This document shows positions 1-49,579 of a DNA stretch of 63,883 bases, in pieces (position 1 is the stretch's first letter; each line of letters opens with the position of its first letter). This DNA comes from Isurus oxyrinchus (lineage: Eukaryota). A program made the position numbers and the translations under genes. The notes under the pieces are model-generated. The model searched no databases, was not told the DNA's origin, and saw only the letters and a list, made by a program, of their open reading frames with translations. The DNA lies in NCBI GenBank assembly GCA_026770705.1, contig JANJGN010000029.1, positions 17,298,118-17,362,000 on the forward strand, read 5' to 3'.

Positions 1-72
1 CACTGCTCTTCTGTAGATTTCCCTAAAGTAGCTGTTCCCAGTCTACCAAATTAAGGAATTTTGAATTAAGTA

Positions 73-1586
73 TTGCTGAAAATGCCAAACCTTTTTGTCT
101 TGCACTCATCAGGACACTGCACAAGTATAAGAGGAATACGACAATTTATATTGAATGTGAAGAGTGCTGATTAGTTGGCAAGTGGACTAAGGTTGTCAGT
201 CGAGCTCATAGTGTGGCACATATGCGTGTTACTGACTTAGATGAGGGGAGTGAAGACACGGTAGCTAGATTTGCTGATGACACAAAGATAGCTAGGAAAG
301 TGTGTTGTGAAGAGGACATGAGGAGGTTACAGATGTGGATATAGATAGGTTGACTGAGTGAGCAAAGATCTGGCAAATGGAGTTTAATGTGGGGAAAATG
401 TGAAGTTCACTTTGGCGAGACGAATAAAAAAGTAGAGTACTACTTAAATGGGGAACTGCTGCATAATTCTGAGGTGCAGAGGGGTCTAGGTGTTCTAGTA
501 CATGAGACAAAAAGTTAGCGTGCAGGTACAGCAAGTAATTAAGGCAGCTAATGGAATACTATCCTTTATTGAGAGGGATTGAACATGAAAGTAAGGATGT
601 TATGCTTCAGTTATACAGGGCAATGGTATGACAACACCTTGCATACTGTGTGTGCAGTTTTGGTCTCATTTAAGGAAGGATGTAAATGCATTTCAGGCGG
701 TTCAAAGGAGGTTTATTAAATTGATACCTGGTATAAGTGAGTTGTCTTAAGAGGAAAGGTTGGACAGACTGGACTTGTTTCCACTGGAGTTTAGAGGAGT
801 GAGGGGTGATTTGATTGAAGTATAAAAGATCTTGAATGGCCTTGACAAGGTGGACATTGAAAGGATGTCCAGAACTAGGGGGCACTGTTTTAGAATTAGG
901 TGTCGCCCTTTTAGGACAGAGATGAGGAGATTTTTTTTCTCTCAGACGGTTGTGCGACTTTGGAATTCTCTGCCTCAGAAGGTGATGGAGGCAGGGGCAT
1001 TGAATATTTTTAAGACAGAGGAAGACAGATTCTTGTTAGGCAAGGGAATCAAAGGTTATCGGGGTTAGATGGGAATGTGGAAATTGAAACACAAGCAGAT
1101 CAGCCATGATCTTATTGAATGGCGCAGCAGGCTTGAGGGGACGAATGGTCTACTCCTGTTCCTATTTCTTATATTCTATGTACTAGAAGCTACATATATT
1201 AATACACAGACCCTGTTCTTTGCAGACAGATAGAATATGTACACACATTGTGCCTGTTTCAGCTAAACAAAATAAATGACAGCCATTTGCTGACTCAAAC
1301 CTCAGAGCAATGTCTTGACCAATCAGGGTCAAGCTGTCTGTCTGGTTTAAATTTCAAACAATGCTTGGCAGTTAACTGTCAGTTACTATCACTGGTCCAT
1401 TCTCCATGGCAACATCTCTGCCAGAGTCCACTTGCTAACCAATCGGCATTCTCTTCACATACAGTATAAATTGTTGTTTTCCTCTGATATTGGTAATCTT
1501 GCGAAGTGTCCTGATGATCGCAAGATGAAAAGTTTTGACGTCTTTTCTTTCCAGCAATGCTCAAGTTCTGTACTACCAAACGACTA
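73..1586. mobile_element. Second Penelope-like family: tail-out inverted insertion (minus arm ~73-189, plus arm ~191-1586), split by a CR1
   Basis: GIY-YIG C-terminus VVSRAHSVAHMRV / LEATYINTQ..VLCRQ on either side of the CR1; CTGATGA..GAAA-type motif in both arms; TSD TTTGAATTAAGTA at 60-72 and 1587-1599. Confidence 0.75.
232..1180 (+). mobile_element. CR1 LINE 3' fragment
   Basis: FADDTK, W...FNVGKCEV, RRFFFSQ.VVRLWNSLP and a typical CR1 3' UTR. Confidence 0.88.
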
Positions 1587-2589
1587 TTTGAATTAAGTAG
1601 TAATGTACAGTCATCACTATTAGAATCTTGCCTATACAGGACACAATCATGTGTTCGCTGTTGTGCTTAATGAACAATTATTTTATATAATCTTGTTTTA
1701 AAGGCTGCAGAAAATGGGAAGAAACACAGAGCAGTCACAACTTGCAATTAACAAGCTCAAATACTTTATTAGAGATATTTAATATCTCTGTCCTGCAGCT
1801 GATGTATAAACTCTCACCTTTACACTGGTTACATGTCAAGGTTATTATGGATGCAAGAGGCTATTCAGTCCGTCTGACTCCTCATCCATCTAGAGACTCC
1901 CCCACCCCCCACACCTACCAACCCCCTAACCCTCCCACCAACCCCCTACCACCCGCCAACAGTGTATCGTCCAACTTTTAAAAAATTATCCGGTGGTTTT
2001 TTCCTCCACAGCTGTATCTGGAAGGCCATTCCACGCAAAGAACTGGCTGTGTCAATCATAAACATACCTTTTGTTCGCTTGCACCTGCGTCCTTGTCCTA
2101 ATTGCATAGTTTGAAGCAATTTTCCAGATTTACTTTTCTCGTATTGTTAATAAAATTATATACTTTGAGAAGATTGTCTCTTAAACATCTTTCAAAACTG
2201 AAAAAAATCAAAGTTTCTCCAATCTTTCCTCATAGGAGCATAGAACTTATAACTCTGGCTTCACATTAGGGATGTCTTCGAGCTTTTTCCTACACTAACT
2301 CTCATGGTCAGAACTGGACACAGTACTCAAGCTATTATCTGACCAGAGCATTGTATCCAGCTTTTACACACTTCCTCTGAACTGCATTCTTCTGTATTGG
2401 CTTTTAAATTTAACATTCTAATGCACGTTTCTACAGCTATTAGGAATGAATTCCTGTGACTGAAAGTCCTTTCAATTTCCAGCCATAACTATTTTCTCCC
2501 CTTTTACCCCTTCTCTCCTGCAGGTGGTGGTTAAGATGCCTGGATGGCGTGTACCAGATAGTAAGATCTACATTTAGCTGTGTTACAGG

Positions 2590-3190
2590 TCATTCTCAGG
2601 TCGGCAGTCTGTGACTAGTGGGTTACTATAAAGATCAGTGCTTGGGCCCCAGTTGTTCACAATCTAGATCAATGATTTGGATGTGGAGATCCATTATAAT
2701 ATTTCCAAGTTTGCTGATGACACAAAACTAGGTGGGAATGAGAGTTGTGAGGTGGATGCAAAGAGGCTTCAAGGGGACTCAGACAGGCTAAGTGAGTGGG
2801 CAAGAACATGGCAAATGGATTATAATGTGGAAAAATGTGAAATTATCCACTTTGGTAGGAAAAACAGAAATGCAGAGTATTTCTTAAATGATTGAGAGAT
2901 TCAGGGACAGAGTCTCAGAATAAGGGGAAGGCCATTTAGGAGCAACGAGGAGGAAGTTCTTCACTCAGCAGGTGGTGAATCTTTGGAATTCATCAACCCC
3001 AGAGGGCCGTGGAGGCTCAGACATTGAGTATGTTCAAGACAGATTGACAGATTTTTAGTTATTAAAGACATCAAAGAATATGGGGATAGTGTAGAAAAAT
3101 GGCATTCAGGTAGAAGATCAGCCATGATCAAGTTGAATGGCAGAGCAGACTCGATGGGTCGAATGACCTACTTCTGCTCCTATGTTCCAG
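2590..3190 (+). mobile_element. CR1 LINE 3' fragment with internal deletion
   Basis: ISKFADDTKLGG...WQMDYNVEKCEIIHFG and a CR1 tail. Confidence 0.85.
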
Positions 3191-8010: not shown

Positions 8011-9274
8011 AGATGCATCACATCTCATCATGGGTGCAATTTTCTTTCCTACCTCCCTTTCCAATGATTTCTCCATCTTACCTGCCCACTCCCATGAAGA
8101 TTATGAATTCTTTTCTGGGATTATAGCTTCACAGGCTCCCTCTATAATTCACCCAAAGTTCATGTGCGAGCCCAAGTAATATCAGCTCTAATCCTGTCTT
8201 CACCCAAGATACAGACAGACACAGACACAGAGTAATGTTGAATTCTGATAAGGACTGATTTTCCCCTATTCATCCAGGCACATTGAGATCAAGTGCAACA
8301 ACCTGTCCCACTGAGGTCAGCTACAGAATTCAGCACAATCTAGGTGGGTCATCACTAAAGAGTCTCAGCACTAATTTGCAGAAAATGTAATATTAAACCT
8401 AAAGTCCTGAGGAAAGCTCATCAACCTGAAACAGGATCGCTCTTTCTCCCCACATATGCTGCCTGGCCTGCTGAGCATTTCCAACATTTTCTGTTTCTAT
8501 ATCAGACAATGCTAGTTGAGGGAATTAAGATTACAATATAGTTTTGGGGTTTTGATGTTATAAATCATGTAACAATGCTTCCCAGGCCATCATTATTTGC
8601 ATTTGTTTGAACGATCATTAAAACCTATATAATATTGTTGCATTAACAAAGCATGACATAAATATACAAACTCTCACCAATCATGCAATTGGTATGAAAA
8701 GCTCATGTGAATTCTTACAAATGTGACGAGGAACAATGGTGTAGCTGAATATATTCTATTGGAATTGCAGCGCATTGCAATATAATTGAGCAGTTAAACA
8801 GATAAAATCTTTGCGATACCTCACATGTTTCATCAACTGACATCAACTTTAAAATTATAAAGCACCTTTAATGAAGTAAAATGTCCCAGGGAACTGATCA
8901 AACAAAATCTGACACCAACCCACATAAACTGATATTAGAATGAGTGAGTAAAAGCTTAATCTAAGAGGTAGGTTTCAAGGGGAGCCTTAAAGGAAAAGAA
9001 AGAGGTAAAAGAGGCAGACAGAGGTTATACAAGGAATATACATACGGTCATGGCAACTAAGGACACAATTACCAATATGAGGATTGGAACAAGTGGCACA
9101 CCTAAAACATAACTGCTCAATCCTCTTATTTAGTTGAGCATTTTCCAGATAAAGCGCAGATTAAAATGCCTCTCAGAAACTCAGCACACTAAAGAGCAAT
9201 CAATACCAGACAGCAACTTTCAGCCTGTAATTTAACCTTGAGTGATGGTTAAAAAAACAGCAAGGGTTCACGCT

Positions 9275-10024
9275 GTATTCACTGCTCCCAATGCAGTCTA
9301 CTGTATGTTGGGGAGACTAAACAAAGACTGAGTGACCACTTTGCTGAATACCTTTGCTCAGTCCACAAGCATGACCCAGACCTCCTTGTCGCTTGCCATT
9401 TCAACTCACCATCTTGCTCCCATACCCACAGCCCATCCTTGGCCTGCTGCAATGTTCTAGTGAAGCCCAAAGCAAACTGGAGAAACAGCAACTCATCTTC
9501 CAATTAAGCATTTTACAGCCTTCCAGGCTTAACATTGAGTTCAACATATTCAGACCATGAACTTTATCCTCCATCTTTACCCCCTTTTTAATCCAGTTTC
9601 ATTTTTTAATTCTTTCCCCCAACCTCCACATGGCCATCTGTCACTTGTTCTTATGTTTTGCTTTTGCAGAGTGCAACCTTGTTCTGACCCTTGTTCTGCT
9701 ATGAACATATTCTGCTTTCTTATCTTTAAGCCACTATCAACACCGCCTTTAGTCTTTAACACTCTCTTTGCCTGTGCCCATGACATCTTTGTCAAATTTC
9801 TCCTGAGCTCCCACCTATCCTTGACCTTCTATTTTGCTCCACCCCCTCTGAAACAGTATAACATCTATCACATTTCTACCTCTCTTTAGCTCTGAAGAGT
9901 CGTACAGGCTTGAAATGTTAACTGTTTCTCTTTCCACAGATGCTGCCACACTTGCTGAGTTTTTCCAGCATTTTCAGTTTTTATTTCAGATCTCCAACAT
10001 CCACAGTATTTTGCTTTTATCTTA
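9275..10024 (+). mobile_element. 5'-truncated Penelope-like element (GIY-YIG end plus 3' tail)
   Basis: CIHCSQCSLLYVGETKQRLSDHFAE remnant; same tail as other copies; imperfect TSD AGGGTTCACGCT / GGGGTTCACACT. Confidence 0.85.
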
Positions 10025-10799
10025 GGGGTTCACACTCGTTGTATGATGTTATCTAAACCTGAATGGATTTAATATCTTGTAATCACCTTCTGCTACCCAA
10101 CAGTCTGAATCTTCTATCCAAAACTCAGCACTCCAACAATGGCCTTTGCTGTAAATACTTTACAACATCAAAATCACTGGAGCTAGTCTATTCATTTCAA
10201 CTGAAAAATACAGCTAATAAAAAGCAAGAAAACTTCAAAGGAAATAAACCTACAAACAAATCATTGTAGATTATCTGCAGGAATACTATAAACGTAATCT
10301 CATTCCCATTTCTCTTTCTGTAAAGAAAATAAATAAAATTTTGCTTCCTGCACAACAGCCGGAATAACTGCACCACCTCACACAAAAAAGCTTAAATATT
10401 TCTGTCTATTGTAAATAGCTCAGTGTCACATATCAAGCCAGCTTCTTTGTTTCTTCCGCGTATCAAATAGAGATCACGCAACCAGTTAGTCTGATGGCTG
10501 AATGTGTGTGAGTAGGCTAATCTTGATCATGAAGGCTAACAATCATCATCCAAGGGCAAGGGAGGATTTAAATCAACCAGGATCCCAGCTCCTGGTAACT
10601 CATCAGTGACTCCATGTGTGGCTGGGGGACAGAATGGCTCTGGGCTACAATTCTCCGAACAGGTGAACATGTGACACAAGATTAACATAATGAAAATGGA
10701 AGCTTTCCTCAGGGTTACCAGTAGGTGGGACTGTACTCTGGTCGCCCAAGAAAGCCAGCAAATTGGGAAAAAGGGAAGGGGGGATAATTGGGAAAAAGG

Positions 10800-13135: not shown

Positions 13136-15167
13136 CGCACCCCCCACTTCCTTCAAAGAAGTTTAGAATAAATCTCCAATGAAACAGCATTTGGTAGAAA
13201 TACGCAGCAAGGTCCGCGTAAAGGGTGGAAAAATACAAGTTAACCTTTAGAGTGCAGACCCTCAATCAGGACATTTACTTATATTTTTTACGACTGAATT
13301 CTCTGTAATGAGAGAGAACTTTGCAAAAAGTTTACAGGCTCGATTATCTGACTTTGTCAAGAATTACATAGAATATGTTTTTTTTTCCATTTTCTGCTGA
13401 AACGTCATCAGGCATACCTAAAAATTAGGTGTCAACTTGGTGAAGCTACAACGCAGGACAACTTGCTTGTCAAACAGCGGAAACAGCATGCAATAGTCAG
13501 AGCTAAGCCATTCACAATCAACCGTTCAGATCTAAGCTCCGCACTTCTGCTACATCCAGTCCTGAATAGTGGTGGACAATTAAACAACTCACTGGAGGAG
13601 GGGGCTCCACAAATATCCCCACCCTCAATGATGAGGGAGCCCAGCACAGCAGTACAAAAGACAAGGTTGAATCATTTGCAGCCATCTTCAGCCAGAAGTG
13701 CCTAGTGGATGATCCATCTTGGCCTCCTGCTGAGGTCCCCAGCACCACAGATACCTGTCTTCAACCAGTTTGATTCACTCCATGTGTTATCAAGAAACAG
13801 TTGAAGGCACTGGATACTGCAAAGGCTATGGGCCCTGACAACATTCAAGCAATAGTACCGAAGACTTGTGCTCCAGAACTGGCCACACACTTAGTCAAGC
13901 TGTTCCAGTATAGCTACAACACTAGCTTCTACCTGGCAATGTGAAAAATTATGCAGGTATGTCCTTTCTACAAAAAGCAGGACAAATCTAACCTGACTAA
14001 TTATCGCCCCATCAGCCTAATCTCGATCATGAGAAAAATTGATGGAAAGTGTTGTCAACAGTGCTATCAAGCAGCACTTACTCAGCAAAAACCTGCTCAC
14101 TGATGCTCAGCTTGGGTTCTGCCAAGGCCACTCAGCTACTAACCACATTACAACCTTGGTCCAAACATGGACAAAAAAGCTGAACTCAAGTGGTGATGTG
14201 AGAGTGACTGCCCTGGATATCCAGTCAGCATTTGACCAAATATGGCATCAAGGAGACCTAGCAAAACTGAATTCAATGAGAATCAGAGGAAAACTCTCCA
14301 CTGATTGGCATCATGCCTAGCTCAAAGGAAGATGGTTGTTGTTGTTGGAGATCAGTCATCTCAGTCCCGGGACATCACTGCAGGAGTTCCTCAGGGTAAT
14401 GTCCTAGGCCCAAACATTGTTTCATCAATGACCTTCCTTCCATCATAAGGTCAATAGTGGGGATGTTCACTGATGATTGCGCAATGCATCATTCACAACT
14501 CCTCAGATACTGAAGCAGTCCATGTCCAAATACAGCAAGACCTGCCCATACTGATAAGTGACAAGTAACATTCATGCCACAGAAGTGCCAAACAACAAAG
14601 GTCTTCAACAACAGAGATTTTAACTATCTCCCATTGACACACAATGGCATTAACATCTCTGAATCCGCCACTATCAACATCCTGGGGGTTATCGTTGACC
14701 ATAAACTGAATTTGGACCAGTTTAAACTAGAATGGCAGGGGGATGGGAACCTGAGCAGGGAACAGAGGAGCGGGAAACAAGGATAGAAACGAAAGAAAAG
14801 TAAGAAACAAAACTGGAAGGCAGAAAAAAACAAGAGCGTAAAACAAATGAGGACATAGTGCAAAATAAAGCTAAGATGACTATTGGGGTTAAAAAGACAA
14901 GTCTAAAGGCTTTGTATCTTAATGCGCAGAGCATTCGCAATACGGTAGATGAATTAACAGCACAAATAGATATAAACAGCTATGACATAGTTGCAATGAC
15001 AGAGATATGGCTGCAGGGTGACCAAGGATGGGAACTGAACATCTAGGGGTATTCAATATTTAGGAAGGACAGACAAATAGGGAAAGGAGATGGGGTAGCA
15101 CTGTTAGTAAAGGATCAATGCATTAGTGAGGAAAGATATTGGCTCAGAAAATCATGATGTGGAATCT

Positions 15168-15254
15168 AGAACAAAAACAAAAATACCTGGAAAAACTCAG
15201 CAGGTCATTTTTGCTTTTGTTCTAGATTTCCAGCATCCGCAGTATTTTGCTTTT
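15168..15254. mobile_element. Minimal tail-out Penelope insertion
   Basis: Two opposed 3' tails; 14-bp TSD ATGATGTG(G/A)AATCT at 15154-15167 and 15255-15268. Confidence 0.85.
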
Positions 15255-15591
15255 ATGATGTGAAATCTGTTTAGGTGGACAGAAGAAACACCAAGGGGCA
15301 TTAAACGTTGATGGGGGTTGTTTATAGACCTACAAACAGTAACATAGATGTAATGGGAAGGCATTAAACAGGAAATTAGAGGCACATGCAGTAAGGGTAC
15401 AACTGTAATCATGGGTGACTTTAATCCACAAAAAGATTGGACAAACCAAACTAGCAATGATACTGTGGAGGAGGATTTCCTGGAGTGTATACGTGATGGT
15501 TTTTTTAGACCAATACATTGAGGAACCAACTAGAGAGCAGGCTATCCTATACTGGGTATTGTGCAAAGAGAAAGAATTAATTAACAATCTT

Positions 15592-15693
15592 AAACAAAAA
15601 CAGAATTACCTGGAAAAACTCAGCAGGGTCTGGCAGCATCAGCGGAGAAGAAAAGTGTTGACGTTTCGAGTCCTCATGACCCTTCAACAGAAC
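15592..15693 (-). mobile_element. Single Penelope 3' tail beginning at the hammerhead motif
   Basis: TSD TAACAATCTT (15582-15591, 15694-15703); minus strand starts GTTCTGTTGAAGGGTCATGAGGACTCGAAACGTCAAC. Confidence 0.8.
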
Positions 15694-18267
15694 TAACAAT
15701 CTTGTTGTGTAGGGTCCCTTGGTGAAGAGCAACCATAAAATGACAGAATTATTCATTAGGATGGAGAGTGAAGAAGTTGAATCCGAAACTAGCGCCCTGA
15801 ATCTAAATAAAGGGAACTGCGAGGGTATGAGGCGCGAGTTGACAATGATAGATTGGGGAACCTTACTAAAAGGCTTGACGGTGGATAGGCAATGGCTAAT
15901 ATTTAAGGAGCATATGCATGAATTACAACAATTATTAATTCCTGTCTAGTGCAACAATAAAACAGGAAAGGTGGCTCAACTATGGCTTACAAAAGAAATT
16001 AGGGATAGTATTAGATCCAAAGAGGAGACATATAAAATTGCCAGAAAATGCAGCAAGAGGATTGGGAGCAGTTTAAAATTCAGCAAAAGTGGACAAAATG
16101 ATTGATCAAGAAGGGGAAATGGAGTATGAGAGTAAACTTGCAGGGAACATAAAAACTGACTGTAAAAGCTTCTATAAATATGTGAAGAGAAAAAGATTAG
16201 CAAAGACAAATATAGGTCCCTTACAGTCAGAATCGGGGGAAATTATAATCGGGAACAAAGAAATGGCAGAAGAGTTGAACATATTTTGGTTCTTTCTTCA
16301 CAAAAGAGGATTCAAGTAATTTCCCAGAAATGTTAGGGAACCAAGGGTCGAGTAAGAGGGAGGAATTGAAGAAAATCAGTATTTGCAAAAAAATGGTGCT
16401 AGAGAAATTAATGGGATTAAAGGCTGAAAAATCCGCAGGCCCTGATAATCTACATCCTAGAGCTCTAAAGGAAGTGGCCTTGGAAATATTGGATACATTG
16501 GTGGTTATCTTCCAAAATTCCATAGACTCTGGAGCAGTTCCTACAAATTGGAGGGTGGCAAATGTAACCCCACTATTTATAAAAGGAGGGAGAATAAAAA
16601 CAGAGAATTACAGATCAGTTAGCCTAACATCAGTAGTAGCAAAAATGCTAGAATCTATTATAAAAGATGAGGTAACAGAACACTTGGAAAGCATTAACTG
16701 GATTAGACAAAGACAGCATGGGTTTGTGAAAGGGAAAACATGCTTAACTAATTTACTGGAGTTTATTTGAAGATGTAACTAGTAAAATAGATAAGGGAGA
16801 ACCAGTGGATGTGGTGTATTTGGATTTCAAGAAGGCTTTTGATAAGGTCCCCTATAAGAGGCTAGTGGGCAAAATTAAAGCACATGGGATCGGGGGTAAT
16901 ACACTGGAATGGATTGAGAATTGGTTGACAGACCGGGAACAGAGAGTGGTCAACCTGTGGAGTTTTCTACCACAGAAGCATGTGGAAGCCGGGTCACTGA
17001 GTATATTCAGGAAAAAAATTGATACATTTTTGGATATTAGGGAACTCAAGGGGTATGGAGAGAAAGCAGGAATATGACATTGAGATAGAGGATCAGCCAT
17101 GATCATATTGAATGGCACAGCAGGCTCGAAGGGCCAAAAGGCCTACTCCTGCTCCTAGTTTCTATGTGTCTATATAAATACCGTAGCTACAAGAGCAGGT
17201 CAGAGGCTGGTAATTCTGCAGAGGAGTAACTCACCTCCTGAATCCTCAAAGCCTGTCCACCATTTACAAAGCACAAAGCAGGACTGCAATGGAATACTCC
17301 CCACTTGCTTGGATTAGTGCAGCTGCAACAACACTAAAGAAGTTTGACACCATCCAGGACAAAGCAACCCATTTGACTGGCACCCCATCCACAAACATTT
17401 ACTCCCTCTCCCACCGGCAAACAGTGGCAGCAGTGTATACCGTCTGCACTGCTGCAATTCACCAAGGCTCCTTCGACAGCACCTTCCAAACCCGTGACCT
17501 GTACCACCTAGAAGGACAAGGGCAGCAGATACATGGGACCACCACCACCTGCAAGTTCCCCTCCAAGTCACTCACCATCCTGACTTGGAACTATATCACC
17601 GTTCCTTCACTGTTGCTGGATCAAAATCCTGGAACTCCCTTCTTAACAGCGCTATGGGTGTTTCTCCAGCACATGGATCCAGCAGTTCAAGAAGGTGGCT
17701 TACTAGCACCTTCTCAAGGGCAATTAGGGATGGGCAATAAATGCTGGCTTAGCCAGCGAAGCCCACACCCCATCAATGAATTTTTAAAAAGATGGAGTTA
17801 AATGCAGGCTCTCACTGTGCCAAACAAATGGCAGAAAGGATTGAGGTGCTGAATGGTCTACTTCCGCTCCTTTGTTTCTTAGTTATCAATAGAACAGAAC
17901 AGAGCTTCATCCGTTAACAAGCAAAGGGAAGAGTTATTTTGCAGGAAGGAGTCTGGGAGGACTTAAAGATAGCTAGCCACCAATCTCAGCGCTGCAAACC
18001 AGAACTATTCATCACCGATTTGTGTGAACAGTATTTGCGTTTTGAAGCATCTGTTTTACGGGTAGCAAATAGAGGCATACCGATGTGGATTGGTTGTTTT
18101 TCAGGTAGACTCAGTATGAATTAATCCCCAAACGCAAGATTGAAAGTAAACTTATATTCCTACAATGTCTTTTCTGTCAAATCATGTAAATAATTAATAA
18201 ATCATGAAAGAATATTTTCTGTCATGTATTTCTTTTTGAAAAGATACTTTGTTGGGAAACCTACTCT

Positions 18268-32539: not shown

Positions 32540-35460
32540 CAAAAACAGAAATACCTGGAAAAACTCAGTAGGTCTGGCAGCATCGGCGGAGAAGAGTACG
32601 GTTGACATTTCTAGGCCTCATGACCCTTCAGCAGAACTAAGTAAAAATAGGAGAGGGGTAAAATATAAGCTGGTTTAAGGGGGGGGGGGATGGTTGTTGG
32701 GACAAGCAAGCAGTGATAGGAAGAGATAACCAAAAGATATCACAGACAAAAGAACAAAGAGGTGTTGAAGGTGGTGATATTATCTAAAAGAATGTGCTAA
32801 TTAAGAGTAGAGAGCAGGACAAGCAAGGTACAGATAGCTCTAGTGGGGGTGGGGTGAAATAAGACTCAAAGGGCAAAAAAGGTATAGATAAAAGATCGGT
32901 GGAATACATTTAAAAATAATGGAAATAGGTGGGAAAAGAAAAATCTATATAAATTATTGGAAAAAATAAAAAGGAAGGGGGAAGAAACAGAAAGGGGGTG
33001 GGGATGGAGGAGGGAGTTTAAGATCTAAAATTGTTGAACTCAATATTCAGTCCGGAAGGATGTAAGGTACCTAGTCGGAAGATGAGGTCCTGTTCCTCCA
33101 GTTTGCGTTGAGCTTCACTGGAACATTGCAGCAAGCCAAGGACAGACATGTGGGCATGAAAGCAGGGTGGAATGTTGAAATGGCAAGTGACAGGGAGGTC
33201 TGGGTCATGCTTGCGGACAGACCGAAGGTGTTCTGCAAAGCGGTCGCCCAGTCTGCGTTTGGTCTCTCCAATGTAGAGGAAACCGCATTGGGAGCAACGA
33301 ATGCAGTAGACTAAGTGGAAGGAAGTGCAAGTGAAATGCTGCTTCACTTGAAAGGAGTGTTTGGGCCCTTGGACGGTGAGGAGAGAGGAAGTGAAGGGGC
33401 AGGTGTTGCATATCTTGCATTCGCATGGGGAGGTGCCGTAGGAGGGAGTGTGGAGTAGGGGGTGATGGAGGAGTGGACCAGGGTGTCCCGGAGGGAACAA
33501 TCCCTACGGAATGCCGCCAGGGGGGGTGAAGGGGTGAAGGTATGTTTGGTGGTGGCATCATGCTGGAGTTGGCAGAAATGTTGGAGGATAATCCCTTGAA
33601 TGTGGAGGCTGGTGGGGTGATAAGTGAGGACAAGGGGGACCCTACCATGTTTCTGGGAAGAAGGAGAAGGCGTGAGGGCGGATGCACGGGAGATGGGCCG
33701 GACATGGTTGAGGGCCCTGTCAACCACTGTGGGTGGAAAACCTCGGTTAAGGAAGAAGGAGGACATGTCAGAGGAACTGTTTTTGAAAGTAGCATCATCA
33801 GAACAGATGCGACGGAGGCGAAGGAACTGAGAGAATGGGTTGGAGTCCTTACAGGAAGCGGGGTGTGAGGAGCTGTGGTCGAGGTAGCTGTGGGAGTCAG
33901 TAGGCTTGTAATGGATATTGGTGGACAGTCTTTCACCAGAAATTGAGACACAGAGATCAAGGAAGGGAAGGGAAGTGTCAGAGATGGACCATGTGAAAAT
34001 GATGGAGGGGTGGAGATTGGAAGCAAGATTAATACATTTTTCCAGGTCCCGACGAGAGCATGAAGCAGCACCAAAGTAATCATGGATGTACTGGAGAAAG
34101 AGTTGTGGGAGGGGGCCAGAGTAGGACTGGAACAAGGAATGTTCCACATACCCCATAAAGAGACAGGCATAGCTGGGGCCCATGCGGGTACCCATAGCCA
34201 CACCTTTTATTTGGAGGAAGTGAGAGGAGTTGAAGGAGAAATTGTTCAGCGTGAGAACAAGTTCAGCCAGACGGAGGAGAGTAGTGGTGGATGGGGATTG
34301 TTCAGGCCTCTGTTCGAGGAAGAAGCAGAGAGCCCTCAGACCATCCTGGTGGGGGATGGAGGTGTAGAGGGATTGGACGTCCATGGTGAAGAGGAGGCGG
34401 TTGGGGCCAGGGAACTGGAAATTGTTGATGTGACGCAAGGTGTCAGAGGAATCATGGATGTAGGTGGGAAGGGACTGAACAAGGGGAGAGAGAAGGGAGT
34501 CAAGATAGCGAGAAATGAGTTCTGTGGGGCAGGAACAGGCTGACACGATCGGTCTACTGGGACAGTCCTGTTTGTGGATTTTGGGTAGGAGGTAGAAGCG
34601 GGCTGTCCGACGTTGGGGGACTATCAGGTTGGAAGCTGGGGAAGGAAGATCTCCAGAGGAGATGAGGTCAGTGACAGTCCTGGAAACAATGGCTTGATGT
34701 TCAGTGGTGGGGTCATGGTCCAGAGAGAGGTAGGAGGAAATGTCTGCGAGTTGACACTCAGCCTCCGCGAGGTAGAGGTCTGTGCGCCAGACAGCAGCAG
34801 CACCACCCTTGTCAGTGGGTTTGATGAGAATGTTAGGGTTGGACCTGAGAGAACAGAGTGTAGTAAGTTCAGAGAGAGACAGGTTAGAATGGGTGAGTGG
34901 AGCAGAGAAATTGAGACGACTAATTTCATGCCAACAGCTCTCAATGAAAAGATCAAGAGAAGGTAAGAATCCAGAGGGAGGGGTCCAGGTGGAGAGAAAA
35001 TATTGGAGGTGGGTAAAAGGATCCGTTGAACAGGGAGAGGACTCCTGCCCAAAGAAGTGAGCACGGAGACGAAGGCGGCGGAAGGAGAGTTCAGCATTGT
35101 GCCGAGCCCGAAATTCATTGGGATGAGGGCATAAGGGTATGAAACTAAATCCTTTGCTGAGCACTGAACATTCAGCGTCGGAGAGAGGAAGGTTAGGGGG
35201 TATAGTGAATACACGGCCGGGGCTGAGATTGGAAGATGGGGTGGGGACGGAGGGACAGGCAGGGGTGGAGGGTCCTGGATGGGTGTTGGTGTCGATGAGT
35301 TGTTAGAGCTTGCGTTCCTTAGCACTTGAGAGAAAGAGAAAAAGTTTCTTGGTGAGGCGTCGGATGAGACGAAGATTAAAATGAAACTGGGGGCACACGC
35401 AGCTTTGAAAAAGGGTACGGCAGTGCTGCTGGAGGGAGAGGTCAAGTGTGTTCATATAGG
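32540..35460 (-). mobile_element. Penelope-like retroelement, left arm of a palindrome (RT + GIY-YIG endonuclease, frameshifted)
   Basis: ORF 33344-35164 has PLE RT motifs (DKGG, FYLLPKIHK, DVQSLYTSI, GVAMGTRMGPSYA); ORF 33018-33500 has GIY-YIG (LVYCIRCSQCGFLYIGETKRRLGDRFAEH). Confidence 0.93.
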
Positions 35461-37846
35461 TCGCACCTTTTTTCAAAGCTGCGCGTGCCCTCAGTTTCAC
35501 CTTATTCTTCGTCTCATCCGACACCTCAACAAGAAACTTTTTCTCTTTCTCTCAAGTGCTAAGGAAGGCAAGCTCCAACAACTCATTGACACCAACACCC
35601 ATCTAGGGCCCTCCACTCTTCCCTGTCCCTCCGTCCCCACCCCATTTTCCAATCCCAGCCCCAGCTGTGTATTCACTATACCCCCTGACCTTCCCCTCTC
35701 TGACGCTGAACATTCAGTGCTCAGCAAAGGACTTAATTTCATACCCTTAAGCCCTCACCTCAATGAATTTCGGGCTCGGCACAATGCTGAACTCTTCTTC
35801 TGGCGTCTTCGTCTCTGTGCTCACTTCTTTGGGCAGGAGTCCTCTCCCCGTTCAATGGATCCTTTTACCCACCTCCAATATTCTCCCTCCACCTGGACCC
35901 CTCCCTCTGGATTCTTACCTTCTCTTAATCTTTTCATTGAGAACTGTTGGTGTGACATTAATCGTCTCAATTTCTCTGCTCCTCTCATCCATTCTAACCT
36001 GTCTCTCTCTGAACTTACTGCACTCCGTTCTCTCAGGTCCAACCCTAACATTCTCATCAAACCTGCTGGCAAGGGTGGTGCTGTTGTTGTCTAACCCTCT
36101 CACATCCTCCAAATAAAAGGTGTGGCTATGGGTACCCACATGGGCCCCAGCTATGCCTGTCTCTTTATGGGGTATGTGGAACATTCCTTGTTCCAGTCCT
36201 ACTCTGGCCCCCTCCCACAACTCTTTCTCCAGTACATCCATGATTACTTTGGTGCTGCTTCATGCTCTCGTCGGGACCTGAAAAAATTTATTAATTTTGC
36301 TTTTAATCTCCACCCCTCCATCATTTTCACTTGGTTCATCTCGATACTTCCCTTCCCTTCCTTGACCTCTCTGTCTCAATATCTGGTGATAGACTGTCCA
36401 CCAATATCCATTACAAGCCTACCGACTCCCACAGCTACCTCAACTACAGCTCCTCACACCCCGCTTCCTGTAAGGACTCCATCCCATTCCCTCAGTTCCT
36501 TTGCCTCCGTCGTATCTGTTCCGATGATGCTACGTTCAATAACAGTTTCTCTGACATGTCCTCCTTCTTCCATAATCGAGGTTTTCCACCCACGGTTGTT
36601 GACAGGGCCCTCAACCGTGTCCGGCCCATCTCCCGTGCATCCGCCCTCACGCCTTCTCCTCCCTCCCAGAAACATGATAGGGTCCCCCTTGTCCTCACTT
36701 ATCACCCCACCAGCCTCCGCATTCAAAGGATCATCCTCCGCCATTTCTGCCAACTCCAGCATGATGCCACCACCAAACACATCTTCCCTTCACCCACCCC
36801 CAGCGGCATTCCGTAGGGATTGTTCCTTCCATGACACCCTGGTCCACTCCTCCATCACTCCTTACTCCTCAACCCCCTCCTACGGCACCTCCCCATGCGA
36901 ATGCAAGATATGCAACACCTTCCCCTTCACTTCCTCTCTCTTCACCGTCCAATGGCCCAAAAACTCCTTTCAAGTGAAGCAGCATTTCACTTGCACTTCC
37001 TTCAACTTAGTCTACTGCATTTGTTGCTCCCAATGCGGTTTCCTCTACATTGGAGAGACCAAACGCAGACTGGGTGACCGCTTTGCAGAACACCTTCGGC
37101 CTGTCCGCAAGCATGACCCAGACCTCCCTGTCGCTTGCCATTTCAACATTCCACCCTGCTCTCATGCCCACATGTCTGTCCTTGGCTTGCTGCATTGTTC
37201 CAGTGAAGCTCAACGCAAACTGGAGGAACAGCACCTCATCTTCCGACTAGGCACCTTACAGCCTTCTGGACTGAACATTGAGTTCAACAATTTTAGATCT
37301 TGAACTCCCTCCTCCATCCCCACCCCCTTTCTGTTTCTTCCCCCTCTTTTTTATTTTTTCCAATAATTTATATAGATTTTTCTTTTCCCACCTATTTCCA
37401 TTATTTTTAAATGTATTCCACCGATCTTTTATCTATACCTTTTTTGCCCTTTTAGTCTTATTTCACCCCACCCCCACTAGAGCTATCTGTACCTTGTGTA
37501 TCCTGCTATCCACTCTTAATTAGCACATTCATTTAGATAATATCACCGCCTTCAACACCTCTTTGTTCTTTTGTCTGTGATATCTTTTGGTTATCTCCTC
37601 CTATCACTGCTTGCTTGTCCCAACAACCACCACCCTCCCCCCTCCCCTTCCCCCTCCCCCCCCCTTCCCCCTTTAAATCAGCTTATATTTCACCCCTTTC
37701 CTATTTTTACTTATTACTGTTGCAGGATCATGAGGACTCGAAAGGTCAACTGTACTCTTCTCCGTCGATGCTGTCAGACCTGCTGAGTTTTTCCGGGTAT
37801 TTCTGCTTTTGTTTTGGATTTCCAGCATCTGCAGTTTTTTGTTTTT
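35461..37846 (+). mobile_element. Penelope-like retroelement, right arm of the palindrome, with an internal ~0.56-kb RT deletion
   Basis: Reverse-complement homologue of the left arm; jumps from GKGGAVVV (~36092) directly to the SH.LQIKGVAMG segment; GIY-YIG ends at 37303. Confidence 0.93.
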
Positions 37847-39892
37847 ATGGACTTCAGTAAGGTTTTTGACAAGATCCCACATGGGAGAATGGTGAAAAGG
37901 GTAAAAGCCCATGGGATCCAGGGCAATTTGACAAATTGGATCCAAAATTGGCTTAGCTGCAGGAAGCAGAGGGTGATGGTCGAAAGTTGTTTTTGCGAGT
38001 GGTGTACAACAGGGATCAGTGCTGGGACCCTTGCTGTTTGTAGCTTAATGATTTATTAATGATTTAGATGTGAATATAGGAGGTATGATCAGTAAGTTCG
38101 CAGATGACATGAAAATTGGTGGTGTCATTAATAGTGAGGGGGAAAGCCTTAGATTACAGGATGATATAGATGGGCTGGTAAGATGGGCAGAGCTGAGGCA
38201 AATGGAATTTAATCCTTAGAAGTGTGAGATGATGCATTTTGGGAGGACTAACATGGTAAGGGAATATACAATGAATGGTAGGACACTAGGAAGTACAGAG
38301 GATCAGAGGGACCTTGGTGTACATGTCCATAGATCCCTGAAAGCAGCAGCACAGGTAGATAAGGTGGTTAAGAAGGCATATGGGATACTTGGCTTTACTA
38401 GTTGAGGCATAAAATATGAGCAGGGAGGTTATGTTGGAGCTGTATAAAATATTAGTTAGGCCACAGCTGGAGTACTGTGTGCAGTTCTGATCACCACACT
38501 GAAGGAAGGATGTGATTGCACTGGAGAGGGTGCAGAGGAGATTCACCAGGATGTTGCCTGGGCTGGAGCATTTCAGCTATGAAGAGAGACTGGATAGGCT
38601 GGGGTTGTTTTCCTTAGAGTAGAGAAGGCTGAGGGGGGGGCAGGGGACCTGATTGAGGTATACAAAATTATGAGGGGCATAGGTAGATAAGAAGAAACAT
38701 TTCCCCTTAGCGGAGGTGTCAATAACCAGGAAGCATGGGTTTAAAGTAAGGGGCCAGAGGTTTAAAGTGGATTTGAGGAAAGATTTTTTCACCCAGAGGG
38801 CGGCTGGAATCTGTAACACACCACCTGAGGGGGTGGAGGAGGCAGGAACCCTCACAACATTTAAGAAGTATTTAGATGAGCACTCAAAATGCCATAGCAT
38901 ACAGGGGTACAGGCCAGGCACTGGAAAATGGGATTAGAATAGATAGGTGCTTGATAGTCAGCATGGACATAATGGGCTGAAGGGCCTGTTTCTGTGCTGT
39001 ATAACTCTGTGACTCTAAAACTGAATATTGGTTCAGATGAGTTCCAGAGTCCCAAAGTCAGGGTCCAATGAAGAATTCTTTCACGTAGGCAATTAAGTTC
39101 ATCTGGCTGGAGACCGGTTTTGTAAGATTTTCTTTTCAGGTAGGGTTGAGTTGCAAGGTAAAATGGGCACACAGAGACTCAGTTGGTTCAATAGCAATGG
39201 TAGGAAATTTTCCAGTAGAGTCAGGTTACATGGTCGGTATCCTGCCTGGACAGAGCTGGCTTCATTGTGGCTTGCCAGGTAGATGGTAAAACTGCCTATT
39301 CAGCCCAGAAATATGATATTAAACTGTTCAAAAGGCCAGAGTCTTGGGTCATGTGACCTAGTCCACAATGACTTCAACACAGGATGTTTATTTGGCTTCT
39401 AGAATTTTGCTTTATTTTCAGGACTGATAATGTCTCAGCTATTACAGGTTGAAAGGGGTGTTGAGGGTCTGGTGTTTAGGAAGCCATTGTCTTAGCAAAC
39501 CCACTGATTCTGCCAGCAAGATTGACTTATCAAAGCCAATAGCTCCCTTTGAAATTGGTCTAAACAGTCCCAGGTTGTCTGCTCGCAGCTACTTAGGCAC
39601 AGTGAGGCGTGACAGTTCTGAAAATGAGAATTCTTTTGTTGTAGAGACTGCTGGAGATAATCCCAGGCAGAATGTCAACTATCTTTAGTTGTCTTTCTTC
39701 AGCAGAAAAGTCAAGTTTAAAAATACGAAATAGCGATAAGGATAAAGCTTTTAAATATATACGGTGTTGGGTTTCTGCTCCGCGTTGGAGGAACTGAAGA
39801 ATATGTTAAAAGTTAGTGTTGAATCTGCTTAACCCACCATTTCAGGCAGTGCATTCCACATCAGGAATTAGAAAAAAAAATCTCAATTCTAT

Positions 39893-41104: not shown

Positions 41105-42410
41105 CAAGAACAAGAAATAGGACCAGCAGTAGACCATATGGTCCTTCAAGCCTGCTCCGCCATTTAATATGATCATGGCTGATCTTGGCTTCAACTCCAC
41201 TCCCTGCCTGCCTGTTCCCCATATCCTTTGATTCCCTGAGCGATCAAAAATCTGTCTATCCCAGCCTTAAAAATATTCAATGATGGGACCATTCACAACC
41301 CTCTGGGGCAGAGAATTCTGAAGATTTACAACCCTTTGAGTCAAGTAATTTCTCCTAATCTCAGTCCTAAATGATCGGACCCTTATCCTGAGACAGCGCC
41401 CCTGAGTTTTAGATTCCCCGACCAGCGAAACATACTCTCAGCATCCATCCTATCAAGCCCCCTCAGAATTTTGTAGGTGCCAATGAGATCACCTCTCATT
41501 CTACTAAACTCCAGAGAATATGGGCTCAATTTACTCAGCCTCTCATCACAGGATAACTCCCTCATCCCAGGGACCAGTTTAGTGAACCTTCACTGTATTA
41601 CCTGCAGCACAAATGTATCTTTTCCTAAACATGGAAAGAGCAGAACTGCACACAATACTCCAGATGTGGTCTCACCAAAACCCTGTATGACTGTAACAAG
41701 ACTTCTTTGTTCGTCTATTCCAATACCCTTGCAATAGAGGCCAACATGCCATTTGCCTTCCTAATTGCTTGCTGTACCTGTATGCTAACTTTTTGTGTTC
41801 CTTGTGCCAGCACACCCAAGTCTCTTTGAACTTCCACACTTACAAGTTTCTCACCTTTTAAAAAATGTTTTCCTTTTCTATTCTTTTGAACAAAGTGAAT
41901 AATTTCACACTTCCCTACATTATAATCCATCTGCCATCTTAACCTGCTTAAGCTTAACCTGTCGATATCTCTTTGCAACTGCTGTGTCCTCCCCATAGTT
42001 TACCTTTCTACCTAACTTTGTATCATCAGCAAACTTTGATACATTACTCTTTGAAATAAAAATAGAAAATGCTGGAAAAACTCAGCAGGTCTGGCAGCAT
42101 CTGTGATGAGAGAATCAGAGTTAACATTTCAAGTCCATATGACTCTTCTTTAGAGCTACATTAGTCTCTGTCTCTTCATCTAAGTCATTAATATAAATTG
42201 TAAATAGCTGAGGCCCCAGCACCGATCCTTGTGGAACTCCACTATTCACTATCTGCCAACTTGAAAGGTTCCAATTTATGCCTGCTCCCTGCTTCTTATC
42301 TGTTAACCAATCTGCTACCATATTACCTTCAATGTCATGCCTATTAATCTTTTGTGTGGCACCTTATCGAAAGTCTTTTTGGAAATTCAGGTGTACTACA
42401 TGTACTGGTT
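41105..42410 (-). mobile_element. CR1 3' fragment with a Penelope tail (42054-42156) inserted
   Basis: [20 protein letters not shown]; the insertion has TSD TACATTACTCTTTG / TACATTAGTCTCTG. Confidence 0.85.
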
Positions 42411-47720: not shown

Positions 47721-47867
47721 AATTTATTGTCCTGGAATGAAGACTGGGGACTTGCAACAAACAACCTAGGGGATAAAATCACAGGGGAACATTCAAAACC
47801 AAAAGTCTGCATTTGTTTCATTTTTCTTTGAACACGTTCATGAGTTATCTGAGATGGGGAAATAACA

Positions 47868-48142
47868 AAACAAAAACAGAATTACCTGGAAAAACTCAGC
47901 AGGTCTGGCAGCATCGGCGGAGAAGAAAAGAGTTGACGTTTCGAGTCCTCATGACCCTTCGACAGAAGAAAAGAGTTGACGTTTCGAGTCCTCATGACCC
48001 TTCGACAGTTCTGTCGAAGGGTCATGAGGACTCGAAACGTCAACTCTTTTCTTCTCCGCCGATGCTGCCAGACCTGCTGAGTTTTTCCAGGTAATTCTGT
48101 TTTTGTTTTGGATTTCCAGCATCCGCAGTTTTCTTTGTTTTT
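47868..48142. mobile_element. Young palindromic Penelope mini-insertion with three hammerhead motifs
   Basis: Perfect 14-bp TSD ATGGGGAAATAACA (47854-47867, 48143-48156); arms meet at CTTCGACAG-TT-CTGTCGAAG; 43-bp unit duplicated at 47921-47963 and 47964-48006. Confidence 0.92.
48007..48045 (+). ncRNA. Minimal type I hammerhead ribozyme-like motif (core variant CUGUCGA)
   Basis: AGUU-CUGUCGA-A-GGGUC/GACUC stem II-GAAA-CG-UC-AACU; palindromic ACGU in place of stem III, as described for PLE hammerheads. Activity untested. Confidence 0.7.
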
Positions 48143-49579
48143 ATGGGGAAATAACATCTTGCTGGGCTGGGCTGGCAGGTTGGAGGTGGGTGGTTAAATA
48201 ATGAAACCCCCAGGAATACGTCCATCAAGAGTTGGCAACCTAAACGGAGGGCACATTGTGTAATGGCTCATCTTAGACAGACAATTACAAGAGAGGAAAA
48301 ATGGCTAGTGTGGCAAGCTGTAGGTAGTCTAGACAAAATAGAGTTGATGTATTTGATGTCATTTTCTTCCTGTTCATTTTGCTCAGTTGTTCCTGCCTTA
48401 AATTTGCTTCCCAATTTATTTTTCAATGCATAAATGCATTTAAAATATATGCATAAATGCATATTAAAATAAAATCAATTTTGACTATTCCAGATCCACC
48501 CTTTTACCCATTGTTTCTGAGGTTACAGGGTAACTAACTGCATTACATCCCCGCCTGCCTCGACAAACTCCATCCTGAGCCCAGCCTCGATGGGTCACTT
48601 AGGAACTGCACTGAGTTGCACAGACCAGGAAGTTCCTGGGTTCATTAGGCAGTTAGTTCTGTTCGTTGGAGTCGCCCTTGGATTAGGATGGGGGTAAAAG
48701 TCATCCCGGGGTTCCACCCGGGCGCTACTATCCAGTAAGTGCGCCCCCTCTCTTCCCCAGCTGACAGGTACATGTCCAAATGTTGAATGAGAATAGAATT
48801 GAGCCTGATGCATTGTAGACGAACAGTCTACCTTGGATAGGCAGTTGAAGGGAAGTGGCTTAAAGGGGCTTCAGGGTGGACATGAGGGATCAGGATTACT
48901 GTTTGCGTGGAGGATAAACGCCTACATGAATGGCATGTTTTTGTGCTTTCATGATTCTAATTCTATGACCACTGTGGTTTACAGCTGATAAACATCCTGT
49001 GGATGAGTGACTTGAAGGATAAGGCTGGTGTTTATGAGTTGCTGCCTTCAGGAAACGAGGGGAGAAAATAAGGTTGTTTCATTGGAAGAAAATTACTCTA
49101 ATGGCCGTGAGATGAATTATGACAACCAGCACAAGGTGGATGAGGCTTTCATCCACCCAGTTACTATGACACCTATTCCACCCAGCTTGCTCTTGACAGG
49201 GGCCCATGTCAAATACCACGAGCACTTTCCCACTCCGAAACACGACTTTGGACACAGTGGCTATACGTGTGGGGTGGTTTGTTGAGAGTGGCTCTCGGGT
49301 CCTGTACGACTTCAGTGTTGCTGAAGGTCCCAAACCTTATCCTGAATGAGCAGGTTACATGGTTGCAACCTGGACATGCTGGGATGTGTTGGCTGTGGCC
49401 CTGCGTTTCCATTGGCCAAGGCAGAACAGAATCAGACCAAATTATGTAGACTGTCCTCATGGCAACAGGTCACACTGGAGTTATATGCAGCCAATCAAAT
49501 ACATCTCAAACACACAGATTTTAGTTAAGATACCAACAACCTTTGAACACTGCTATAGTTCATAGTAAAGGAAAAAGAG

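What the first reader, a model, noticed from the sequence alone, without database searches (positions are those of the whole stretch)
60..48156. Recurrent tail-out, asymmetric, TSD-flanked Penelope insertions: one integration signature across families and sizes
Seen: six insertions (73-1586, 15168-15254, 18733-19069, 20728-20905, 32540-37846, 47868-48142, plus a vestigial case at 21203-21304) consist of two element 3' ends facing outward inside a 12-14 bp target-site duplication. One arm always runs at least ~30 nt further (GATTTCCAGCATCYGCAG...TTTT in family A; CTCAAGTTCTGTACTACCAAACGAC in family B). Established: Penelope-like elements use a GIY-YIG nuclease, carry pseudo-LTRs with a short 3' tail, and inverted copies are known. 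Inference: both strands of a ~14-nt staggered cut prime reverse transcription, one at the true RNA 3' end and one ~30 nt internal (the pLTR end), and the two cDNAs are joined at their truncated ends. This would be a two-ended priming mechanism that gives retroelements a MITE-like appearance.
Basis: partly seen in the sequence, partly recalled or inferred. Interest (0 to 1): 0.85.

Follow-up and report, generated by a model that had tools for sequence, protein, structure and literature searches.

The report
Head-to-head Penelope insertions in a shark
Seven insertions in this shark window really are pairs of Penelope-like retrotransposon 3' ends facing outward inside one 12-14 bp target duplication, with one arm about 30 nt longer. 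This is the published hallmark of Penelope-like elements, so it is a well-documented example and not a new kind of element.

Summary
All seven insertions have a 12-14 bp TSD (three perfect, four with one mismatch), two outward-facing 3' arms, and one arm 29-36 nt longer (67 nt at 20728).

Family A is a true EN+ Penelope-like element. The arms of the 5.3-kb palindrome align to residues 94-659 and 417-800 of an 806-aa homologue that carries RT and GIY-YIG domains.

New evidence:
- A sister species about 2% diverged (three samples, three studies) has a precise empty site lacking both arms and one TSD copy of the 275-bp insertion.
The tail-less ones end at the same template position as the paired short arms.
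- Short-arm junctions carry 0-5 nt of microhomology.

However, [quoted passage not shown] is already published (Arkhipova 2013; Craig 2021). Frangieh 2024 showed in vitro cleavage and extension of both strands, with two RT start sites a tail-length apart.

Two-ended priming is therefore a reasonable, favoured but unproven synthesis. Self-priming (Arkhipova 2013) is not excluded. Family B is Penelope-like by architecture only. This scan holds many unverified first-reader notes describing the same architecture elsewhere in this genome.

The parts
60..1599 (.). Family B pair. TSD 60-72 and 1587-1599. Short arm 73-~196 (inverted). LINE fragment 196-1186. Long arm ~1187-1586, with a 29-nt tail at 1558-1586.
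   Evidence: The arms are 78% alike over 113 nt. There is no coding sequence, so PLE identity is inferred from architecture only.
15154..15268 (.). Family A mini pair, 87 nt. TSD 14 nt (1 mismatch). Short arm 15168-15206 (inverted). Long arm 15207-15254, with tail 15224-15254.
   Evidence: There is a 5-nt microhomology (AGATT) at the short-arm junction.
18721..19081 (.). Family A (older subfamily) pair, 337 nt. TSD 12 nt (1 mismatch). Short arm 18733-~18950 (inverted). Long arm ~18951-19069, with tail 19034-19069.
   Evidence: The inner ends are unequal: about 218 nt on one arm against about 86 nt of shared sequence on the other.
20714..20919 (.). Family A pair, 178 nt. Perfect 14-nt TSD. Short arm 20728-~20785 (inverted), ending about 40 nt further inside the element than the other short arms. 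Long arm ~20790-20905.
   Evidence: The differences between the arms are mostly transitions.
21191..21316 (.). Vestigial pair, 102 nt. TSD 12 nt (1 mismatch). Short arm 21203-21285 (inverted). Segment 21286-21304 matches the last ~13-19 nt of the tail.
32526..37860 (.). 5.3-kb palindrome of two near-ORF-length PLE copies. TSD 14 nt (1 mismatch). Left arm 32540-~35440 (inverted, no tail). Right arm ~35441-37846, with tail 37812-37846. About 42 nt lie between the arms.
   Evidence: Arms 91-96% complementary. The left arm holds 561 nt (34228-34788) that are absent from the right arm. RT ORF 33344-35164(-) and GIY-YIG ORF 36122-37303(+). A paralogous CR1 copy is collinear across the site.
47854..48156 (.). 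Youngest pair, 275 nt. Perfect 14-nt TSD. Short arm 47868-~48009 (inverted), with a 43-nt tandem duplication at 47923-48008. Long arm ~48010-48142, with tail 48109-48142.
   Evidence: Arms 100% identical over about 100 nt. Precise empty site in the sister species, in 3 runs (table 8).
15579..15703 (-). Solo tail-less copy 15592-15690 with its own 13-nt TSD (1 mismatch).
   Evidence: Its 3' end lies at the same template position as the paired short arms.
42040..42169 (-). Solo tail-less copy 42053-42156 (older subfamily) with a 13-nt TSD (2 mismatches).
   Evidence: Four paralogous LINE copies are collinear across the empty site.
9264..10036 (+). Solo 5'-truncated copy 9275-10025 with the full tail and an 11-nt TSD (1 mismatch). 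It starts inside the GIY-YIG coding region.
20296..20700 (-). Solo 5'-truncated copy with the full tail. TSD unclear.
63650..63780 (-). Old solo copy with the tail. Diverged, TSD unclear.

Best explanation
These are single-event integrations of a shark Penelope-like element (family A: RT plus C-terminal GIY-YIG) and of its short non-coding derivatives.

Proposed mechanism:
1. The element's nuclease makes a staggered double-strand break about 13-14 nt wide. This leaves two complementary 3' overhangs, which later become the TSD.
2. Each 3' end primes reverse transcription of element RNA.
3. One primer starts at the distal start site, at the very end of the tail (...TTTTATC).
4. The other starts at a second site 31-36 nt upstream, just before (T/A)GATTTCC.
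5. The two cDNAs, either 5'-truncated or run to the end of the template, are joined head to head.

If only one end primes, the result is a solo copy, with or without the tail.

Shown here: the architecture, the single-event origin, the PLE identity of family A, two discrete 3' ends shared by solo and paired copies, and junction microhomology.

Inferred: that the second arm is primed by the other target strand, and why each pair uses one start site of each kind.
For: - TSDs of 11-14 nt flank seven pairs and three solo copies.
- The sister species has a contig running 47673-47853 straight on to 48143-49000 in three samples from three studies. Both arms and one TSD copy are absent together (table 8).
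- A paralogous CR1 copy is collinear across the 5.3-kb insertion, and four LINE paralogues are collinear across solo 42053.
- PLE identity: the left-arm ORF shares 49% identity with residues 94-659 of the 806-aa P0015, and the right-arm ORF aligns to residues 417-800 including the GIY-YIG block. Homologues carry PF00078 and PF01541.
- 7 of 8 short arms, paired or solo, end within about 5 nt of each other. In the solo copies this end must be the priming end, because the other end is the variable 5' truncation.
- Flank and template match at 18 of 24 positions in the first 3 nt beyond the short-arm end, against about 7 expected (P about 2e-6). Three long arms show a possible 2-nt 'AT' overlap with the TSD, though the shared element end ...ATC is seen intact only in the other subfamily.
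- 7 of 7 pairs are one tail plus one no-tail. Solo copies are 3 with and 2 without, so P is about 0.006-0.008 if the two ends were chosen independently.
- Genome-wide loose ends cluster at 48109/48115 and at 48132/48144 (table 7).
- PMC11167929 reports that a purified PLE protein cleaves and extends both strands, and that RT starts at two adjacent sites whose spacing equals the tail.
Against: - No sequence feature here separates priming on the second strand from fold-back self-priming of one cDNA (PMC3846280). Both give the same product.
- Three pairs are nearly symmetric at the centre (2-nt, ~15-nt and ~42-nt centres), as fold-back predicts. Run-off on a full-length template or a defined short template explains this as well.
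- Both arms of the 5.3-kb palindrome share the inactivating YIHD at the RT catalytic site. This fits one template or one arm copied from the other.
- In vitro, both start sites were used on both strands without preference (PMC11167929). That does not by itself explain strict one-of-each pairing.
- The sample is 7 pairs in one window.
- The filled allele at 47868 is not bridged by any listed contig of the source species.
Confidence: 0.55

Rival explanations
1. Self-priming (fold-back). Only one target strand primes, at the tail end. When the cDNA stops, its 3' end folds back on itself and copies the cDNA outward, stopping about 30 nt before the start. That end is then annealed to the other 3' overhang. 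This is the model proposed for PLE inverted repeats by Arkhipova et al. 2013.
For: PMC3846280 infers self-priming from palindromes at inverted junctions. Here three centres are near-perfect palindromes: 47868 with a 2-nt centre, 20728 with ~15 nt and the big pair with ~42 nt. The arms of the youngest pair are identical. Both arms of the big palindrome share the YIHD lesion. Microhomology at the short-arm junction is also expected if that end is annealed to the overhang.
Against: It needs a separate reason for outward synthesis to stop at the very template position where solo tail-less copies begin their cDNA. A 2-nt loop is too small for a fold-back primer. The family B arms are only 78% alike beside a perfect 13-nt TSD, which has P about 0.04 if the arms were identical at birth and evolved at the same rate as the TSD. 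The right arm of the big palindrome lacks 561 nt that the left arm has. In vitro, both strands are extended (PMC11167929).
Confidence: 0.3
2. Retrotransposition of pre-existing palindromic master copies. A hairpin-shaped copy is transcribed as a whole and re-inserted by ordinary one-ended priming from the tail.
For: That would imply that hairpin RNA can be a template.
Against: Every pair in the window has a different inner junction and different arm lengths: 39/17, 218/86, ~57/~47, ~142/~100 and 2.9 kb. More than 1200 different left-to-right joints were seen genome-wide, though this evidence is weak because the sides are short (table 5). The RNA 5' end would also have to fall exactly on the short-arm end each time.
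Confidence: 0.06
3. Two independent insertions in opposite orientation at the same spot. Alternatively, a class II MITE with terminal inverted repeats, or an assembly artefact.
For: Inverted terminal repeats with a TSD look superficially like a MITE. Palindromes are prone to assembly errors.
Against: One TSD encloses both arms and there is no internal TSD. The sister species lacks both arms precisely. The arms are the 3' part of an RT/GIY-YIG retroelement with variable 5' truncation. To my knowledge, TSDs of 12-14 nt and ends that differ by about 30 nt fit no DNA transposon superfamily. Seven cases ranging from 87 nt to 5.3 kb cannot all be artefacts.
Confidence: 0.03

Closest known systems
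Canonical EN+ Penelope-like element insertion architecture (e.g. Pen2a_Av of Adineta vaga, PMC3846280; general description in PMC8557442)
   Same: An inverted 5'-truncated copy or pLTR lies next to the element, forming terminal inverted repeats. A 30-40 bp 'tail' (31 bp in Pen2a_Av) is present on only one of the two ends. One TSD encloses the whole unit. 5' truncation is frequent. The ORF encodes RT plus a C-terminal GIY-YIG domain.
   Different: The TSD here is 11-14 nt with a mode of 13-14, against 8-10 bp in the rotifer examples. No direct pLTR (partial tandem) is present in any copy in this window. Most pairs are tiny non-coding hairpins of 87-337 nt. Rfam detects no hammerhead.
PAc (Poseidon of Anolis carolinensis) in vitro reaction, Frangieh et al. 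2024 (PMC11167929)
   Same: There are two RT start sites separated by the length of the tail. Both target strands are cleaved and extended. Genomic copy ends fall on the start sites.
   Different: [quoted passage not shown] Here the junctions carry 0-5 nt of microhomology and all pairs are one-of-each. The template around the start site is U/G-rich here, not an AC-rich stem-loop. The main text of that paper (the part I read) does not derive inverted pairs from the reaction.
L1 twin priming (Ostertag and Kazazian 2001; from my own knowledge)
   Same: The second 3' end at a staggered break primes reverse transcription, producing an inverted segment inside one TSD.
   Different: In L1 the two segments are different, adjacent parts of one RNA, and the second primer anneals internally at variable positions. 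Here both arms are the same 3' region, each starting at a defined start site. So either two template copies are needed or one template is copied twice.
Class II MITEs
   Same: Small size, terminal inverted repeats, flanking TSD and very high copy number.
   Different: The arms derive from a retroelement 3' end. The ends are unequal by about 30 nt. Inner junctions differ from copy to copy. The TSD is 12-14 nt.

Membership tests
EN+ Penelope-like elements (family A) | PLE-type reverse transcriptase | tested here: met
   ORF 33344-35164(-) shares 49% identity over 568 aa with P0015. 746 homologues at E<=1e-5, with top hits from sharks and a ray. The Pfam RVT_1 hit is weak (3.8e-5, below the curated cut-off).
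EN+ Penelope-like elements (family A) | C-terminal GIY-YIG endonuclease in the same ORF as the RT | tested here: met
   ORF 36122-37303(+) aligns to P0015 residues 417-800, including the GIY-YIG block. Homologues carry PF01541. The copy itself is broken into several ORFs, and Pfam alone gives only 0.0018.
EN+ Penelope-like elements (family A) | 30-40 bp tail on one end only of an inverted or tandem unit, inside a TSD | tested here: met
   Tails of 31-36 nt on exactly one arm in the four family A pairs measured at 15168, 18733, 32540 and 47868. The extension is about 67 nt at 20728, and at 21203 only the last ~19 nt of the tail is present. All are enclosed by a TSD.
EN+ Penelope-like elements (family A) | Pseudo-LTR formed by partial tandem copies | tested here: not met
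   No long direct repeats in 32300-38000. No tandem copy anywhere in the window. The literature allows pLTRs to be 'direct or inverted' (PMC8557442), so this does not exclude membership.
EN+ Penelope-like elements (family A) | Hammerhead ribozyme motif in the terminal repeat | tested here: inconclusive
   No Rfam hammerhead hit at the gathering threshold or at E<=10. By eye there is a minimal helix-III-less motif (CUGNNGA, a 5-bp stem, GAAA). The core is canonical (CUGAAGA) in the older subfamily and has U at position 6 in the younger one. PLE hammerheads are described as minimal, lacking helix III (PMC6155905).
Penelope-like elements (family B, 73-1586) | Derivation from an RT/GIY-YIG element | not testable with these tools
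   There is one copy, no coding sequence and no other match in the window. A look-up by sequence in the scan notes was blank, which means nothing. Only the architecture is PLE-like: 13-nt TSD, inverted arms, a 29-nt extension on one end, and a CUGAUGA...GAAA box.
L1-type twin priming | The inverted segment and the direct segment are adjacent, non-overlapping parts of one RNA | tested here: not met
   Both arms cover the same 3' region of the element.
Class II MITE | Equal terminal inverted repeats, a fixed internal sequence per family, and a superfamily-typical TSD (2-10 bp) | tested here: not met
   Ends are unequal by 29-67 nt. Inner junctions differ in every copy. TSDs are 11-14 nt.

The most novel reading that the evidence does not exclude
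PLE integration in vivo may be an obligately two-ended, heterotypic reaction. A dimeric RNP would hold both 3' overhangs of a ~14-nt staggered break and start one cDNA at the distal site and the other at the proximal site. That would explain why every pair has exactly one tail. Solo copies would then be aborted half-reactions. The very numerous mini-hairpin copies in this shark, together with a ~2% diverged sister species that provides empty sites, would form a natural data set able to prove it.
Probability: 0.4. Interest if true: 0.6.

Novelty: new member of a known kind. Interest (0 to 1): 0.33.

Why it matters
How Penelope-like elements integrate is still unresolved. The literature offers self-priming (2013), 'EN-mediated resolution' (2021) and an in vitro reaction that extends both strands (2024).

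This window does not settle the question. It does show that shark genomes hold very many small, datable, TSD-bounded head-to-head pairs, with empty sites available in a close relative.

A genome-wide census could decide between two-ended priming and fold-back without any biochemistry. It would need to score end types, arm differences at birth and junction microhomology.

For annotation, these hairpins should be classed as PLE derivatives. They should not be called MITEs, microRNA precursors (Rfam gives spurious miRNA-like hits) or DNA transposons.

Tried and rejected
1. Rfam hammerhead search. I ran it on the whole window at the gathering threshold and on three sub-regions at E<=10. There was no hammerhead hit, only spurious miRNA-like hits on the hairpin.

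2. Tail resemblance idea. I suspected that the TSD next to the short arm resembles the first 14 nt of the tail, which would explain the asymmetry by annealing of only one overhang. The overall count was 43/112 matches (P about 0.002-0.005). The signal sits entirely in the first 3 positions. Positions 4-14 give 25/88 against 22.4 expected (P = 0.30), and shifted registers score as high. I rejected the idea except for short junction microhomology.

3. RNA folds of the 3' regions. z-scores ran from +1.0 to -1.9, so there is no significant structure.

5. Literature searches for an explicit two-ended or twin-priming model for PLEs found none.

6. Paralogous empty sites in the window were found only for the 5.3-kb pair and solo 42053, not for the other insertions.


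Full report
**What is there**

The window (63,883 bases, no N) comes from an elasmobranch. The best protein matches to its retroelement ORF are from Chiloscyllium, Stegostoma and Mobula.

A script that looked for the best duplicated flank, allowing 8 nt of slop on each side, returned these TSDs:

| Insertion | TSD match |
|---|---|
| 73-1586 | 13/13 |
| 15168-15254 | 13/14 |
| 18733-19069 | 11/12 |
| 20728-20905 | 14/14 |
| 21203-21304 | 11/12 |
| 32540-37846 | 13/14 |
| 47868-48142 | 14/14 |

BLAST against the right arm of the large element, and a MAFFT alignment of all outer ends, give a consistent picture. In each pair the left arm is the reverse complement of the element's 3' region. The right arm is the same region in sense.

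The right arm runs further by 35, 34, 31 and 36 nt in family A and by 29 nt in family B. The difference is about 67 nt in the 20728 pair, whose short arm ends about 40 nt further inside the element. At 21203 the 'right arm' is only the last ~19 nt of the tail.

The same family also occurs as single arms.
- With the tail: 9275-10025 (11-nt TSD with one mismatch; it starts inside the GIY-YIG coding region), 20296-~20700, and ~63650-63780.
- Without the tail but with their own TSDs: 15592-15690 (13 nt, one mismatch) and 42053-42156 (13 nt, two mismatches).

The tail-less solo copies end at the same template position as the paired short arms. Seven of eight short ends fall within about 5 nt of each other, just before (T/A)GATTTCC. 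In a solo copy that end must be where reverse transcription began, because the other end is the variable 5' truncation.

**Identity**

The 5.3-kb unit is a long inverted repeat. Its arms are 91-96% complementary, with about 42 nt between them.
- The left-arm ORF (33344-35164, minus strand) aligns at 49% identity to residues 94-659 of the 806-aa homologue P0015.
- The right-arm ORF (36122-37303) aligns to residues 417-800, including the GIY-YIG block.
- Homologues carry PF00078 and PF01541. The Pfam hits on the copy itself are weak.

RT with a C-terminal GIY-YIG domain defines an EN+ Penelope-like element. The sense strand confirms that the 3' ends face outward.

The copy is defective. Both arms read YIHD at the catalytic YxDD position. 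The right arm also lacks 561 nt of RT coding sequence that the left arm keeps.

Rfam finds no hammerhead. By eye there is a minimal, helix-III-less hammerhead-like box, as described for PLEs in PMC6155905. I leave that feature as inconclusive.

Family B has one copy, no coding sequence and arms only 78% alike. It is Penelope-like by architecture only.

**One event or two?**

Contigs from four public runs were laid on 47000-49000.
- In a species holding about half of the 31-mers, which corresponds to about 2% divergence, one contig per run covers 47673-47853.
- That contig continues without a break at 48143-49000. This holds in three samples from three studies.
- The sister species therefore has a precise empty site. 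It lacks both arms and one copy of the 14-nt TSD.

The arms of this pair are 100% identical over about 100 nt, which fits a recent insertion.

Two further results support single events.
- The reconstructed empty site of the 5.3-kb palindrome is collinear with a paralogous CR1 copy at 16711-16900.
- The empty site of solo 42053 is collinear with four LINE paralogues.

Each pair is thus one insertion. Two successive insertions, a class II MITE and an assembly artefact are all rejected. One caveat remains: no listed contig of the source species bridges the filled junctions at 47868.

**How it most likely works**

The geometry implies a break with 3' overhangs of about 13-14 nt. The left TSD copy ends in a 3' OH from which the left arm, which is cDNA polarity on the top strand, can be extended. 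The same holds on the bottom strand for the right arm.

Several observations make the short-arm end look like a priming end.
- It coincides with the start of solo tail-less copies.
- The flank matches the template continuation at 18 of 24 positions in the first three nucleotides, against about 7 expected (P about 2e-6).
- Three long arms show a possible 2-nt 'AT' overlap with the TSD. This is weak, because the element end ...ATC is seen intact only in the other subfamily.
- Genome-wide, contigs diverge from the element at two places, 48109/48115 and 48132/48144 (table 7).
- All seven pairs have one end of each kind, while solo copies are 3 with the tail and 2 without. Independent choice would give P about 0.006-0.008.

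I tested whether the whole TSD resembles the start of the tail, which would explain the asymmetry by annealing. It does not: beyond the first three positions the match is at chance level.

**Comparison with what is known**

The structure is not new.
- Arkhipova et al. [quoted passage not shown] They propose self-priming.
- Craig et al. 2021 (PMC8557442) give the same architecture as a general PLE feature. [quoted passage not shown]
- Frangieh et al. 2024 (PMC11167929) show that a purified PLE protein cleaves and extends both strands. Reverse transcription starts at two adjacent internal sites, and the tail is the sequence between them.

I found no paper that states it explicitly.

It differs from L1 twin priming because both arms are the same 3' region. 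So either two templates are needed or one template is copied twice.

Fold-back self-priming gives the same final DNA. It is not excluded, and several points favour it:
- three near-palindromic centres;
- identical arms in the youngest pair;
- the YIHD lesion shared by both arms.

Several points count against it:
- the coincidence of paired and solo short ends;
- the 2-nt centre at 47868, which is too small for a fold-back loop;
- the 78%-alike family B arms beside a perfect TSD;
- the 561-nt difference between the arms of the large palindrome.

I put two-ended priming at about 0.55 and fold-back at about 0.3.

**Verdict**

This is a real, clean and well-supported example of the known PLE insertion signature in shark families.

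What it adds:
- a precise orthologous empty site;
- the match between solo and paired endpoints;
- junction microhomology;
- strict one-of-each pairing, in a small sample.

The same architecture is described in many unverified first-reader notes elsewhere in this genome. It is a property of the genome's PLEs, not of this locus.

Interest is modest. Its value is that this genome, with its close relative, could decide the integration model by census.

Noticed in passing
window 196-1186: A 5'-truncated LINE fragment lies exactly between the two arms of the family B pair. Its 3' end coincides with the family's natural 3' end and abuts the inner end of the right arm. This could be a template switch of the arm's cDNA onto a LINE RNA, or a later LINE insertion at the centre. 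I saw no clear LINE TSD.
   Followed up: partly
window 47923-48008: The inner end of the left arm of the 275-bp pair carries a perfect 43-nt tandem duplication of the first 43 nt of the mini-element. It looks as if the RT reached the template 5' end, jumped back and copied it again.
   Followed up: partly
window 34078-36250: Both arms of the 5.3-kb palindrome read YIHD where homologues have the catalytic YIDD. The template was therefore an RT-dead copy mobilised in trans. The right arm additionally lacks 561 nt (34228-34788 in the left arm).
   Followed up: partly
window 47868-48142, 18733-19069 and other family A 3' regions: There is a minimal hammerhead-like box (CUGNNGA, a 5-bp stem, GAAA, then ACGU/GUC). 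The core is canonical (CUGAAGA) in the older subfamily and has U at position 6 (CUGUCGA) in the younger one. Rfam models do not detect it, and the hairpins instead give spurious microRNA-precursor hits.
   Followed up: partly
window 48060-48128 and equivalents: A 7-bp pairing between GAUGCUG upstream and CAGCAUC inside the tail recurs in some RNA folds of family A 3' ends and encloses the internal start site. The fold z-scores are not significant.
   Followed up: no
window 20296-20919: The 178-nt pair at 20728 sits only about 27 nt beyond the 5'-truncated end of an older solo copy of the same family. This may be chance, or a preference for inserting near PLE sequence.
   Followed up: no
window 47871-48138 (table 2): Summed contig depth over the mini-element is about 1e7, against about 15-46 in unique flanks, in both species. 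This is not a copy number, but the family is evidently extremely abundant in both genomes.
   Followed up: no
window 11560-12710: A G+C-rich (0.51-0.58) low-complexity tract gives many short hits to the C-rich stretch of the PLE. I did not examine it.
   Followed up: no
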